Below, one piece after another: positions 27,271 to 31,856 of a stretch of DNA of 64,000 nucleotides. A program made the translations under genes and the position numbers. The stretch lies in the IMG/VR virus record IMGVR_UViG_3300020474_000001, positions 62,001 to 126,000 of that record; one strand, written 5' to 3'. The notes under the pieces were generated by a model, which saw only the letters and a list, made by a program, of their open reading frames with translations, made no database searches and had not been told where the DNA came from. Each line of letters starts with the position of its first letter. Position 1 is the first letter of the stretch.

Positions 27271-27560
27271 ATAAAATCTCCAAAATAGTTTGGTTCTTCA
27301 TCATCATCCAAGTCGTCATACAATGAACATGGTTCTTCAAACAACTTATCCATTCTCAGTTGTTTTATCCTCTCCCTCAACTGTTTGTGTAGTTCTCTTT
27401 GATCGTCTTCGTTTAACATCTTTGTGTTTTGTGAATGGTTCCCAATGCTCCCAACCATGTTCATGGACAGCTGACATACCTAAAATAGGCACAACGACTA
27501 ACAAAAAGCAGAGAGCACCTAAAGTATATGAATTATTTAGCACCCAAGCAGAAAAATGTA

Positions 27561-28898
27561 TCATGATGGATAGTCCCAATTTGTAATGCCATCTACTTTG
27601 TGACTTGGTCCCCAAAGTCCTTCTTTATAAATGTAAGGCGTTGTTCTAATCTGGCAGTAGTCCCCAGTACACAACAAGTCATCAACAATCCTCCATGATT
27701 CTATCACTTCTTCGGAATGAACAAAGTGAGATTGATCTCCCTCAATCGCGTCATAAAGAAGTTTTTCATAACCATCAACACCCAACCAATCAGGATAGCG
27801 ATGAGTCAAAGTAGCTGATTCAACACCATCACCAAGTCCAGGAGACTTAACGTCTATACGAATATCAAGATGAGCATCTGGTTGAAGTCTCATTACAATA
27901 CGATCTTTTGTTTCTCCATCAAATAAACTAAGCGGAGGTGATTTTAGTTTAATCACAACTTCAACGCACTGATAAGGCATCTTCTTTCCTGTCATGAAGT
28001 AGAATGGAACACCTTTCCATCTCCAGTTATCAATATAAAGATCACCAGCAACAAAGGTTTGTGTCATTGACTCTGGAACAACACCTTGTTCATCACGATA
28101 TCCTTCATATTGACCCGTGATAAACTTCTTACCCAGTCTAGTTGCAGATAGGACCTTAACCTTTTCTCTACGAATCTCTTTTGCATCCATACGGCAAGGA
28201 GCTTCCATTGCAATCAACGAAAGAACCTGAAGCATATGATTCTGCAACATGTCTCTTACAACACCTGCAGTTTCATAGTATTGGGAACGTCCTTCACAAC
28301 CAATAGTTTCAGTAGCAAAGATTTGAACTTCTTCTATATAATCCCTGCTCCAAAGTGGTTCAAGAAGAATATTACCAAACCGAGTGGCAAGGATATTGTT
28401 AACAGTATCTTTACCGAGATAATGGTCAATACGATATACCTGTTTCTCGCGTAGATGTCTGCTAACCACTGACTGTAGATGATTAGCAGATTGAAGATCG
28501 TGCCCAAAGGGTTTTTCAATAACCACACGGGATGTTTCTGGATCGTCGAGGAGTTCTGTTCTTTTGAGACTTGTGATGGCATTTTCGTACCTCTCTGGGG
28601 GAACAGATAAGAAATAAGTTGTGTCATCTGTTTCTGGAAGATGATACAGACTTTCCGGGTCATCTAAATCACATGAAACATAGTCAAGATGATTAGTAAA
28701 TTCTTCAGGGTATTCTCCCAAACTTTTCAACCAATCATCTCTACTAGGATCTCTTCTGGAAGCACCTGTAATTAAAAACCTATGTGGAAGGAGATTTTTC
28801 TCCCACAGTTTATAAAGCGCAGGTATTAGTTTTCTTTTACACAAATCTCCAGTAGCACCGAAGATTACTATACCTTTAGTGAGCGGTTCCGTTTCCAT
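27561..28898 (-). CDS. zwf: Glucose-6-phosphate dehydrogenase
   Basis: IFGATGDL, EKPFG, RIDHYLGK, RDMLQNH; start METEPL. Confidence 0.97.
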   Translation of the reverse strand: METEPLTKGIVIFGATGDLCKRKLIPALYKLWEKNLLPHRFLITGASRRDPSRDDWLKSLGEYPEEFTNHLDYVSCDLDDPESLYHLPETDDTTYFLSVPPERYENAITSLKRTELLDDPETSRVVIEKPFGHDLQSANHLQSVVSRHLREKQVYRIDHYLGKDTVNNILATRFGNILLEPLWSRDYIEEVQIFATETIGCEGRSQYYETAGVVRDMLQNHMLQVLSLIAMEAPCRMDAKEIRREKVKVLSATRLGKKFITGQYEGYRDEQGVVPESMTQTFVAGDLYIDNWRWKGVPFYFMTGKKMPYQCVEVVIKLKSPPLSLFDGETKDRIVMRLQPDAHLDIRIDVKSPGLGDGVESATLTHRYPDWLGVDGYEKLLYDAIEGDQSHFVHSEEVIESWRIVDDLLCTGDYCQIRTTPYIYKEGLWGPSHKVDGITNWDYPS

Positions 28899-29004
28899 TA
28901 TATTTGTCTGTTTCGTAGTAGTTATTTTCACCTTTTCGTACCCCGAAATATATTGTGGATAGTACGAATGGTATTGCGACGATAAGAAGGACATTAGCGA
29001 ACAT
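28876..29004 (-). CDS. ndhP: NdhP-like small NDH-1 subunit (42 aa)
   Basis: MFANVLLIVAIPFVLSTIYFGVRKGENNYYETDKYNGNGTAH: single TM plus FG..YxTDxYxGNGxAH C-terminus characteristic of NdhP. Confidence 0.78.
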   Translation of the reverse strand: MFANVLLIVAIPFVLSTIYFGVRKGENNYYETDKYNGNGTAH

Positions 29005-30016
29005 GATGACCTCCGAACATAAATCTCATACCGTTTAGGATTTTGTTTGCGAATTCTCCGAGTCTCCTTGAATTAAATCGTTCAAATAGTGCTGCAGATA
29101 TAACAGGTGAGGGTACACCAAGATCCACAGCAGCGTGGACAGTCCAACGACCCTCACCACTATCGCTAACTCCCCCACCGAACTTGCTAAGCTCTCGATC
29201 GCTGCGTAGTACATCAGCGGTAAGATCAAGCAACCAAGACCCAACCACGCTACCACGACGCCATAACTCAGCCACTTCAGCACAGTCAATATCATAGCAA
29301 TAATCTGCCGGATTTTCCATCGGAGCCACCTCAGCATCACCCTCCTTGACATACTTACTCCCAGCATTTGCTTCATGCAGGATATTAAATCCCTCTGCGT
29401 ATGCTTGCATGATCCCATATTCAACTCCGTTGTGAACCATCTTTACGAAGTGACCCGCCCCAGGTCCACCACAGTGGAGCCAACCGTACTCAGCGGAAGT
29501 TGCACCTGAGAGAGGGTCAGTTCTGTCAACGGCCCCGATACCTGGTGCGAGTGCCCTAAAGATTGGAGAGCAAGTGGATACTGCGCAATTTGTACCGCCA
29601 ACCATAAGACAGTATCCACGGTCCAAACCATAAACACCACCAGAAGTGCCGCAGTCAATATATTCGATGCCCAAGTCTGCCAAGTATTCTGCCCGTCTCC
29701 GTGAGTCCTTAAAATTGCTATTGCCATGATCGATAACAATATCTCCAGGACCAAGTAGTGGTAATAAGTCATTAATAGTGTCCTCAACTAATTCTGCTGG
29801 AATGACGAGTTGAAATATTCCTGGGACCCCGTCAGATTTTACTACTTGAACAAGGCTTTCCAAAGAATCTGCAGCTGCAGTAATATACCCACTGTCCGCT
29901 GCTTCGCATGCTTTGGCATAGTTTCTTCTGTATCCATAGGTTTCAATTCCCTCCTTTAACATTCGACGAGACATTCCCTCGCCCATTCGTCCCAATCCAA
30001 TAATTCCTACTTTCAT
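28994..30016 (-). CDS. gnd: 6-phosphogluconate dehydrogenase (short type)
   Basis: GLGRMG, DCGTSGG, GHFVKMVHNGVEY, DSGEGRW. Confidence 0.97.
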   Translation of the reverse strand: MKVGIIGLGRMGEGMSRRMLKEGIETYGYRRNYAKACEAADSGYITAAADSLESLVQVVKSDGVPGIFQLVIPAELVEDTINDLLPLLGPGDIVIDHGNSNFKDSRRRAEYLADLGIEYIDCGTSGGVYGLDRGYCLMVGGTNCAVSTCSPIFRALAPGIGAVDRTDPLSGATSAEYGWLHCGGPGAGHFVKMVHNGVEYGIMQAYAEGFNILHEANAGSKYVKEGDAEVAPMENPADYCYDIDCAEVAELWRRGSVVGSWLLDLTADVLRSDRELSKFGGGVSDSGEGRWTVHAAVDLGVPSPVISAALFERFNSRRLGEFANKILNGMRFMFGGHHVR

Positions 30017-30267
30017 CCTTTTACCTCATTTTGAAAATATTCGGGGAGCGGACACCCCTTAAAATCGTTTACAGTATCAACTGCTAAAACAAACATACAT
30101 ACGAACCCCAGACAGAAAGCAAATAGCATCTGTGGAAAATTATAATTCCCCATATTTGCAGTTGGATCCGGTTCATCGTCATGCGGATGAATCATTTTAC
30201 TGATCTCTTCCGCCCTCTTTTTCCTTTCCTTTTCCTTCTCTTCTGGGGTCTTTGCCATTATTCCCAA
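30013..30267 (-). CDS. Small membrane protein
   Basis: HPHDDEPD plus TM helix. Confidence 0.6.
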   Translation of the reverse strand: MGIMAKTPEEKEKERKKRAEEISKMIHPHDDEPDPTANMGNYNFPQMLFAFCLGFVCMFVLAVDTVNDFKGCPLPEYFQNEVKG

Positions 30268-30918: not shown

Positions 30919-31431
30919 TTAGGATTTTGAATTAATCAATTCTATTGCATCATGCAATTCTTTTGAGTGATGCAATTCATCATTCAAAATCTCAAGGATC
31001 TTGTCGTCATGCCCATTGATAGCAAGAAACTTACCATAAGTTTCTGCTGCGTGAATCTCTACTTCGTAAGAGAGATGGTAAGCATTGCGAGGAGATACCC
31101 AATAATAAACCACGTTAACCCAATAGTAGATAAAGACGAGATGCTTGGCAACAAAACGATCGATATAATAAGTGTTGCCGCCCCGACTTTCCATGTACTC
31201 CAGATGCTCTGTTTCATTGACTGACTGTTCGAAGTGCTGTTTCATCAAATATAGATGTTCGGGACCACGAAGTCCCATAGATTCTCGAAAGTGCAAGACA
31301 CTTAAGAAAGCGAAATAAGGTGCCCGAGCAATTTCCTCAAGCACCCAGAAACGCTGAAAGTCGCGTCCCTCATAAAGAAAATCCAAAATTGCAACAGTGA
31401 TATTTAAAACAATACTGTTAAGTGTTTTCAT
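30919..31431 (-). CDS. ptox: Plastoquinol terminal oxidase (PTOX/alternative oxidase)
   Basis: RFWVLEEIARAPYF; diiron ligands NETEHL, EIHA, DELHH. Confidence 0.93.
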   Translation of the reverse strand: MKTLNSIVLNITVAILDFLYEGRDFQRFWVLEEIARAPYFAFLSVLHFRESMGLRGPEHLYLMKQHFEQSVNETEHLEYMESRGGNTYYIDRFVAKHLVFIYYWVNVVYYWVSPRNAYHLSYEVEIHAAETYGKFLAINGHDDKILEILNDELHHSKELHDAIELINSKS

Positions 31432-31523: not shown

Positions 31524-31856
31524 TCACTCAACATGAATTGTTCCAGTCATGCCTGCACCTTTATGTGGGGCACACCAAAAATTATAATCGCCAGCTTCAG
31601 AAAATGCAATCTCAAAGTCTTCACCTGGTAACATTACCAGGGCATCATGACTTAACTCTGGATGATCTTCCACAACTACATTGTGTGGTGGAAGCATATT
31701 ATTGATAAAATGAACTGTATCACCGGCAGAAATAGTAACCTCTGAAGGTTCAAATATAAGATTTCCGCTGGCACCCATCACCACATCTGCGGCAAACACA
31801 GGAGTAGCAAAAAATAGTGTAGCAATTAGTGCAAATAAAAACTTCATAATAGTCAT
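31524..31856 (-). CDS. petE: Plastocyanin
   Basis: Signal peptide; PHNVV; Cu ligands CAPH..AGM. Confidence 0.95.
   Translation of the reverse strand: MTIMKFLFALIATLFFATPVFAADVVMGASGNLIFEPSEVTISAGDTVHFINNMLPPHNVVVEDHPELSHDALVMLPGEDFEIAFSEAGDYNFWCAPHKGAGMTGTIHVE

What the first reader, a model, noticed from the sequence alone, without database searches (positions are those of the whole stretch)
28876..29004. Unannotated ndhP-like micro-gene wedged between gnd and zwf
A 42-aa ORF missed by the ORF track overlaps the gnd stop and the zwf start. It has one TM helix and the C-terminus YYETDKYNGNGTAH, closely matching cyanobacterial NdhP, which stabilises NDH-1L (respiration and cyclic electron flow). 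Its translational coupling between the two NADPH-producing oxidative pentose phosphate genes, close to PTOX and petE, suggests coordinated rewiring of electron flow. It also shows that the ORF-track zwf start (28994) is too far upstream.
Basis: partly seen in the sequence, partly recalled or inferred. Interest (0 to 1): 0.6.

Follow-up and report, generated by a model that had tools for sequence, protein, structure and literature searches.

The report
Cyanophage copy of NDH-1 subunit NdhP
A 42-residue gene squeezed between the phage's gnd and zwf genes is a real, conserved phage version of NdhP, a tiny membrane subunit that holds the cyanobacterial NDH-1L electron-transport complex together; phage ndhP has been reported before, but it is far more common and more often unannotated than recent papers say.

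Summary
Window 28876..29004 (- strand) encodes a 42-aa peptide (P0001). It has one hydrophobic helix and a polar tail ending in the motif NGNGTAH. It overlaps the gnd stop by 11 nt and the likely zwf start (ATG 28898) by 23 nt.

It is a real gene. The frame is intact in all 71 unique related phage sequences. dN/dS is 0.26 in this frame and about 1.0 in the zwf frame. It matches phrog_2173 at E=5e-26.

It is an NdhP homologue. phmmer against the PDB finds only NdhP of the solved Thermosynechococcus NDH-1L (E=3.6e-6; profile 1.4e-8), aligned to the exact C-terminus. The phage profile finds one copy in 80 of 81 host-family genomes. A modelled complex with Synechococcus WH7803 NdhD scores 0.80, against 0.00 for the controls.

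Most likely it inserts into host NDH-1L and keeps it assembled during infection. That is inferred, not shown.

Phage ndhP is already in the literature, so the kind is known. Two points seem under-appreciated: it occurs in about 395 of about 471 T4-like cyanophage records (zwf in only about 78), and it is usually unannotated or covered by a wrong-frame ORF. The 28994 zwf start is probably an annotation artefact.

The parts
28876..29004 (-). ndhP-like gene, 42 codons plus TAA stop (P0001). Residues 2-20 form the TM helix. Residues 23-42 form a polar, presumably cytoplasmic tail ending in NGNGTAH.
29010..29014 (-). GGAGG Shine-Dalgarno-like motif 5 nt upstream of the ndhP ATG. It is encoded by the Gly-Gly codons in the gnd tail.
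   Evidence: An SD-like motif is present in 39 of 72 unique related junctions.
28994..30016 (-). gnd (6-phosphogluconate dehydrogenase, 340 aa). Its last 11 nt, including the stop, overlap the start of ndhP.
   Evidence: The overlap is 11 or 14 nt in 60 of 81 related loci.
27561..28898 (-). zwf (glucose-6-phosphate dehydrogenase, 445 aa) from the proximal ATG at 28898. That ATG is embedded in the Asn-Gly codons of the ndhP tail, giving a 23-nt dual-coding overlap.
28899..28994 (-). The 32-codon upstream extension of the longest zwf ORF, in a different frame over ndhP. Probably not translated as Zwf.
   Evidence: dN/dS of about 1.0 in this frame. Its second codon position is the most variable. 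Stops in 5 of 71 relatives. The upstream ATG is absent in 10 of 72 junctions.
30919..31431 (-). Context: plastoquinol terminal oxidase (PTOX/AOX family).
31524..31856 (-). Context: petE plastocyanin.

Best explanation
The ORF is a phage-borne ndhP, an auxiliary metabolic gene derived from the picocyanobacterial host lineage. The peptide would insert into the thylakoid membrane through its single N-terminal helix, with the polar C-terminal tail on the cytoplasmic side. It would take the NdhP position against NdhD1, at the NdhD1/NdhF1 end of the host NDH-1L complex. Cellular NdhP acts there as 'molecular glue', and NDH-1L falls apart to NDH-1M without it. Supplying this subunit while host gene expression is shut down would keep NDH-1L assembled. 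Ferredoxin-to-plastoquinone electron flow (cyclic flow around PSI and respiratory flow) and the ATP it yields would then continue during infection. The gene sits in one same-strand block with gnd and zwf. Its start overlaps the gnd stop and its last 23 nt carry the zwf start codon, so the three are probably expressed together. Shown here: the gene is real and under purifying selection, it is homologous to experimentally verified NdhP, it belongs to one phage clade, and its anatomy is as described. Inferred: membrane insertion, incorporation into NDH-1L, the stabilising effect, and the translational coupling.
For: Gene reality: the frame is intact in 71 of 71 unique related sequences, and its mean pairwise amino-acid identity (0.82) is the highest of the six frames. 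Codon-position variability is 0.144/0.056/0.206. dN/dS is 0.26 against 1.01 in the zwf frame. It matches phrog_2173 at E=4.8e-26 over its full length. tblastn finds it in 395 phage records, all cyanophage or marine virus. Homology: the only significant PDB hits are NdhP of the solved NDH-1L (E=3.6e-6 with the single sequence; 1.4e-8 with the profile). The phage profile finds one copy in 80 of 81 genomes of the host family. A Prochlorococcus copy hits PDB NdhP at E=1.2e-7. TM helix: KD mean 2.19. Binding model: P0001 with Synechococcus WH7803 NdhD (NU4C_SYNPW) scored 0.80, against 0.00 for the best of 3 controls. That mark was reached by 51 of 78 solved complexes and 2 of 108 mismatched pairs. 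The runs agree in at least 77% of contacts and the partner's pLDDT is at least 69. The interface uses the invariant PFVLSTIYFG helix. Role of NdhP in cells: PMC4131877, PMC6992706, PMC11794437. Context: PTOX and petE are nearby. No promoter or terminator enrichment separates the genes.
Against: There is no direct evidence of translation, membrane insertion or association with NDH-1. The complex model may score high from memory of solved NDH-1L, and it cannot tell a stabiliser from a competitor. The phage type differs from both host types: about 54% identity, and a conserved 3-residue insertion (ENN) after the helix. It may therefore not be a simple spare part. The metatranscriptome data gave only short contigs of relatives, and these may include DNA. 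It is not known that host NdhP turns over fast enough for a phage copy to matter.
Confidence: 0.7

Rival explanations
1. The phage NdhP is a modified subunit that displaces host NdhP and changes or weakens NDH-1L. It might reduce the drain of reduced ferredoxin/NADPH so that reductant from the phage's pentose-phosphate enzymes goes to nucleotide synthesis. Or it might retune the complex rather than just preserve it.
For: Phage copies form their own clade (support 87 in the quick tree). They carry a conserved ENN insertion and a helix/tail combination seen in neither host type. The complex model supports binding but says nothing about its effect.
Against: All residues invariant between host types and T. 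elongatus NdhP (FG, YY, Y.G.G.AH) are kept, as expected for a working subunit. The neighbouring phage genes PTOX and petE point to keeping electron flow going.
Confidence: 0.15
2. The ORF matters mainly as a translational coupling device. Ribosomes that translate it deliver or unmask the embedded zwf start, and the peptide itself is secondary.
For: The zwf ATG lies inside the last 26 nt of the ORF in 72 of 72 unique junctions. In phages without zwf, another small ORF starts at the same embedded ATG. No obvious SD precedes the zwf ATG.
Against: A coupling role does not explain amino-acid conservation along the whole peptide (dN/dS 0.26), or its homology to a structural subunit. The embedded ATG follows automatically from the Asn/Asp-Gly or Tyr-Asp codons of the conserved tail. 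The two roles are not exclusive.
Confidence: 0.08
3. The micro-ORF is not expressed. The long zwf ORF from 28994 is the real gene, and the NdhP likeness is a relic.
For: The zwf frame is open in 66 of 71 relatives and has an ATG 32 codons upstream in 62 of 72. Many GenBank records annotate the long form.
Against: dN/dS is about 1.0 in that frame and its second codon position is the most variable. Ten of 72 junctions lack the upstream ATG and 5 of 71 sequences carry stops in that frame. The ndhP frame persists intact in hundreds of phages that have no zwf at all.
Confidence: 0.03

Closest known systems
Cyanobacterial NdhP (T. elongatus NdhP in PDB 6HUM/6KHI/6L7O/6NBY; Synechocystis sml0013)
   Same: Length of 40-45 aa. 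One N-terminal TM helix. The same motif FG.R.G..YY[DE][ST]D.Y.GNG.AH running to the very last residue. Significant sequence match. Modelled against NdhD as in the solved complex.
   Different: About 54% identity to host types. A 3-residue insertion (ENN) between the helix and the YY motif. The helix resembles the Prochlorococcus type (IPFVL) while the tail resembles the Synechococcus type (GNGTAH, no DVKR extension). It is encoded by a virus and overlaps gnd and zwf.
Previously reported cyanophage ndhP (GOS viral scaffolds; P-TIM68; S-SCSM2R ORF226)
   Same: The same kind of gene: a phage-borne NdhP homologue counted among the photosynthetic-electron-transport AMGs (PMC10452541, PMC3877843, PMC6596454, PMC12801897).
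   Different: PMC12801897 calls it uncommon, known before only from P-TIM68. Here tblastn finds it in 395 phage records. I could not read the original reports (Nowaczyk 2011, Sharon 2011, Schwarz 2013), so I do not know how much of the gnd/zwf overlap they described.
PHROG phrog_2173 (unknown function)
   Same: Full-length match, E=4.8e-26, to a 43-position profile. This is the phage family the ORF belongs to.
   Different: PHROGs gives the family no function. The NdhP assignment comes from the PDB comparison.
Plant NDF6 / PnsB4 (chloroplast NDH subunit)
   Same: The literature reports weak similarity to NdhP (PMC4131877). The phage profile gives weak hits to 7wff_d and 9grx_4 over the FG...YY...G segment.
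   Different: E-values of 0.6-0.7 are not significant. NDF6 is 93-161 aa long and nuclear-encoded.

Membership tests
NdhP (NDH-1L subunit P) | Significant sequence similarity to an experimentally verified NdhP | tested here: met
   6khi_P E=3.6e-6 and 6hum_P E=3.3e-5 with the single sequence. Profile E=1.4e-8, with the next unrelated hit at 0.08.
NdhP (NDH-1L subunit P) | Peptide of about 40-45 aa with a single N-terminal transmembrane helix | tested here: met
   42 aa. KD mean 2.19 over residues 2-20, with a polar tail.
NdhP (NDH-1L subunit P) | Conserved C-terminal motif (FG..G..YY.[ST]D.Y.G.G.AH) at or near the C-terminus | tested here: met
   Alignments. Columns invariant among 22 phage copies include Y29, Y30, Y35, G37, N38, G39, A41 and H42.
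NdhP (NDH-1L subunit P) | Orthology with the single-copy ndhP of host cyanobacteria | tested here: met
   The phage profile finds a match in 80 of 81 genomes of the host family, one per genome in 79. A Prochlorococcus copy hits PDB NdhP at E=1.2e-7.
NdhP (NDH-1L subunit P) | Physical association with the NdhD1/NdhF1 module of NDH-1L | tested here: inconclusive
   In silico only. Score 0.80 against 0.00 for the best of 3 controls with WH7803 NdhD. The mark was reached by 51 of 78 solved complexes and 2 of 108 mismatched pairs. Contact agreement is at least 77% and partner pLDDT at least 69. The score may reflect memory of the solved complex.
NdhP (NDH-1L subunit P) | Required for, or able to restore, stable NDH-1L assembly and NDH-dependent cyclic flow | not testable with these tools
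   Needs complementation and BN-PAGE.
NdhP (NDH-1L subunit P) | Match to a curated Pfam or NCBIfam NdhP model | tested here: inconclusive
   No hit for P0001. Bona fide cellular NdhP copies also hit nothing, so these libraries hold no NdhP model.
Plant NDF6/PnsB4 | Significant sequence similarity | tested here: not met
   E=0.62-0.73 with the profile. This is a lead only.
phrog_2173 | Full-length profile match | tested here: met
   E=4.8e-26, residues 1-42 on profile positions 2-43 of 43.

The most novel reading that the evidence does not exclude
Phage NdhP is not a rare spare part. It is a near-core, phage-specific variant, present in about 84% of T4-like cyanophage records, forming a single clade and carrying a conserved ENN insertion. 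It would actively retune host NDH-1L, for example by locking it assembled or altering its activity or partner choice. This would link pentose-phosphate-derived reductant to plastoquinone reduction during infection. That would make NDH-1 a main target of viral control of electron flow, alongside PSII.
Probability: 0.2. Interest if true: 0.6.

Novelty: already known. Interest (0 to 1): 0.3.

Why it matters
NDH-1L drives cyclic electron flow and respiration in the ocean's most abundant phototrophs. A viral copy of the subunit that holds it together suggests phages keep this ATP-producing route alive during infection. The kind of gene is already published. The practical value here is corrective. 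The gene is present in most T4-like cyanophage records but is usually unannotated, called 'hypothetical', or covered by a wrong-frame ORF or an over-long zwf. AMG surveys therefore undercount it, and a 2025 paper calls it uncommon. Pfam and NCBIfam lack an NdhP model, which explains the gap. The 23-nt dual-coding overlap with the zwf start is a neat example of genome compaction.

Tried and rejected
- Pfam and NCBIfam scans of P0001 found nothing relevant. This is uninformative, because genuine cellular NdhP copies also hit nothing.
An alignment (A1) was used instead.
- The primary reports of phage ndhP and of NdhP itself are not held in the library: Nowaczyk 2011, Sharon 2011 and Schwarz 2013. 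I rely on papers that cite them.
- The Swiss-Prot reference NU4C_SYNPX is not held. NU4C_SYNPW was used. I did not verify that this NdhD paralogue is the D1 type.
- RNA evidence gave only short Logan contigs of relatives (88-99% identity) from marine metatranscriptomes over gnd, ndhP and zwf. No contig spans the junctions convincingly, and DNA carry-over cannot be excluded. I make no claim of transcription.
- The Rfam scan of 28500-29400 gave only a chance-level let-7 hit, E=0.99. Promoter- and terminator-like sites are not enriched.
- The careful ML tree did not finish in 288 s, so the quick tree was used. With about 45 columns it cannot name a donor lineage.
- I compared dS between blocks to look for a second coding constraint on ndhP synonymous sites. 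ndhP gave 0.63, gnd 0.71 and zwf 1.5. This is too noisy to add much.
- The large protein-representative search was not run, because the family was already settled.

Full report
**What is in the sequence**

The window is part of a 207,655-bp IMG/VR virus record. It carries a T4-type major capsid gene, and its nearest cultured relatives are Synechococcus myoviruses such as S-SCSM1 and S-SM2.

On the minus strand, the ORF listing gives gnd at 28994..30016, a 42-codon ORF at 28876..29004, and a longest zwf ORF at 27561..28994. The 42-aa product is P0001.

- Reading the minus strand, a GGAGG lies 5 nt upstream of the ATG at 29004.
- The gnd stop codon lies inside codons 3-4 of the small ORF, giving an 11-nt overlap.
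- A second zwf-frame ATG at 28898 sits inside the Asn-Gly codons of the small ORF's tail, giving a 23-nt overlap.
- From that ATG, Zwf is 445 aa and the Pfam G6PD_N match starts at residue 11.
- Residues 2-20 of P0001 are strongly hydrophobic (KD mean 2.19) and the last 20 residues are polar.
- PTOX and plastocyanin lie just upstream on the same strand.

**Is it a gene?**

An ORF of this size is common by chance: 62 ORFs of at least 30 aa overlap these 6 kb. The test therefore has to be conservation.

- phrog_2173 matches over the full length at E=4.8e-26.
- tblastn finds the peptide in 395 phage records, all cyanophages or marine viruses.
- In 80 IMG/VR loci plus the window, the frame is intact in all 71 unique sequences.
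- Every other frame on either strand has stops in at least some of them (the zwf frame in 5, the other four in 23 to all 71). Mean pairwise amino-acid identity is highest in this frame (0.82).
- Codon positions vary in the order 3 > 1 > 2 (0.206, 0.144, 0.056).
- Over the 31 codons that do not overlap the proximal zwf start, NG86 dN/dS is 0.26 in this frame and 1.01 in the zwf frame.
- Its dS (0.63) is similar to that of a gnd block (0.71), so there is no sign of a second reading-frame constraint (noisy).

**Is it NdhP?**

- phmmer of P0001 against all PDB chains returns exactly two sequences. Both are the NdhP chain of solved Thermosynechococcus NDH-1L structures (E=3.6e-6 and 3.3e-5). The alignment runs to the last residue of both proteins.
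- A profile of 22 phage copies (A1) improves this to 1.4e-8. The next hit, an antibody chain, is at 0.08. Plant NDF6/PnsB4 appears only at E of about 0.6-0.7.
- The same profile finds one match in 80 of 81 genomes sampled from the host family. It finds one copy in each of three genomes checked individually.
- A Prochlorococcus copy hits PDB NdhP at 1.2e-7.
- Pfam and NCBIfam give nothing for P0001, but they also give nothing for cellular NdhP. They simply lack a model, which explains why annotation pipelines miss this gene.

**Three sequence types**

The alignment shows three types.

- The Prochlorococcus type has an IPFVL-like helix and a tail ending GDGCAH plus DV[KQ]R.
- The Synechococcus/Cyanobium type has a GLFVL-like helix and a tail ending GNGTAH.
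- The phage type has the IPFVLSTIYFG helix, a three-residue ENN insertion, and a tail ending GNGTAH.

The phage type is about 54% identical to either host type. In a quick ML tree, all 72 phage or phage-like rows sit on one side of a branch with support 87. With about 45 columns, no donor lineage can be named.

**Anatomy across phages**

- In the 81 loci, zwf always follows, with its start inside the ndhP tail.
- An ATG at the window's position or one codon upstream is present in 72 of 72 unique junctions.
- gnd overlaps the ndhP start by 11 or 14 nt in 60 loci. It lies 57-618 nt upstream in 15 loci. It was not found in the upstream DNA held in 6 loci: 5 with at least about 1.3 kb of it, and 1 whose locus holds only 47 nt.
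- The upstream zwf-frame ATG that gives the long ORF is present in 62 of 72 junctions. It follows from gnd's stop plus the Asn/Asp-Val/Ala codons of ndhP, and that frame shows no protein-level constraint. The long zwf is therefore most likely an artefact, although a minor long isoform cannot be excluded.

**Prevalence in the phage collection**

| Query | Records matched |
|---|---|
| gp23-type capsid, named Synechococcus/Prochlorococcus/Cyanophage/Marine | about 471 |
| ndhP | 395 |
| gnd | about 233 |
| zwf | about 78 |

These counts include duplicates and many isolates of the same species. Even so, ndhP is clearly far more widespread than zwf, so its linkage with zwf is not obligatory.

In zwf-less phages the position after gnd is kept, and a 67-71-aa ORF of unknown function starts at the same embedded ATG. 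In S-RIM2 and S-SKS1, GenBank annotates a 98-102-aa wrong-frame ORF over ndhP instead. ACG-2014f annotates ndhP as a 42-aa hypothetical protein.

**How it probably works**

In cells, NdhP is specific to NDH-1L. Its N-terminus faces the lumen and its C-terminus the cytoplasm. It sits at the distal NdhD1/NdhF1 module, contacts NdhD and NdhF as well as lipids and a carotenoid, and its loss breaks NDH-1L down to NDH-1M and impairs cyclic electron flow (PMC4131877, PMC6992706, PMC11794437).

The phage peptide keeps all residues shared by the cellular types.

A modelled complex of P0001 with Synechococcus WH7803 NdhD scored 0.80, against 0.00 for the best of three controls. That mark was reached by 51 of 78 solved complexes and 2 of 108 mismatched pairs. 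The runs agree in at least 77% of contacts, and the partner's pLDDT is at least 69. The interface is carried by the invariant helix. This supports likeness to the solved complex. It may be memory of that complex, and it does not show binding in a cell.

My best reading (0.7) is a spare NdhP that keeps host NDH-1L assembled during infection, expressed together with gnd and zwf.

The rivals are:

- a modified subunit that retunes or weakens NDH-1L (0.15), suggested by the separate clade and the ENN insertion;
- a mainly translational-coupling role (0.08);
- a non-expressed relic under a long zwf (0.03).

**Expression**

Marine metatranscriptome runs contain short contigs of relatives over this region. 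They are fragmentary and may include DNA, so I make no claim of transcription. No Rfam family and no enrichment of promoter- or terminator-like sites separates the three genes.

**Novelty**

Phage ndhP is already in the literature.

- Reviews cite Nowaczyk 2011 and Sharon 2011 for it (PMC10452541, PMC3877843).
- A 2025 genome paper annotates it next to gnd and zwf in S-SCSM2R, but calls it uncommon (PMC12801897).

The finding is therefore a correct identification of a known kind of gene. What seems under-appreciated is its high prevalence, its systematic mis-annotation, and the dual-coding zwf start. I could not read the primary papers, so some of this may already be described there.

Noticed in passing
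L082 (587-718) and L083 (2284-2415): Two contigs filed under non-cyanobacterial MAGs carry phage-type ndhP: 'Methanobacteriota archaeon' (WTHQ01000014.1) and 'Polynucleobacter sp.' (CAYVBV010000048.1). L082 has gnd-ndhP-zwf at 84% and 73% protein identity to the window's genes. L083 has ndhP followed by the small ORF seen in zwf-less phages. They look like cyanophage contigs binned into the wrong genomes.
   Followed up: partly
L162 3005-3301 (S-RIM2), L163 3008-3313 (S-SKS1), L164 3107-3322 (ACG-2014f): In cyanophages without zwf, a 67-71-aa ORF of unknown function starts at the same ATG embedded in the ndhP tail. It has a conserved R-Y-x-F-A-x-S-S-F segment, a Y-F-R-D-L-W-like end, and no Pfam hit. 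In S-RIM2 and S-SKS1, GenBank annotates it with a 31-codon wrong-frame extension that covers ndhP. No homologue was found in the window.
   Followed up: partly
L165, L168-L193 (host loci): Prochlorococcus-type NdhP ends in GDGCAH plus a four-residue extension DV[KQ]R. Synechococcus/Cyanobium NdhP ends at GNGTAH. The Cys and the extension are specific to the small-genome lineage.
   Followed up: no
window 27346..27615 (-) and L162 3500..3679: The ORF just downstream of zwf (89 aa) shares a hydrophobic stretch and a motif (VPILGM.AVH..GWEHWEPF) with an ORF at the syntenic place in S-RIM2. It is a conserved small membrane protein of unknown function with no Pfam hit. Seen by eye only.
   Followed up: no
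L163 2528-2998 (S-SKS1): The gene annotated as 6-phosphogluconate dehydrogenase upstream of ndhP in S-SKS1 is only 471 nt, less than half the usual length. It may be a remnant, while ndhP is kept intact.
   Followed up: no
window 30013..30267 (-): An 84-aa ORF directly upstream of gnd overlaps gnd's start by 4 nt. It has a hydrophobic segment and no Pfam match.
   Followed up: no
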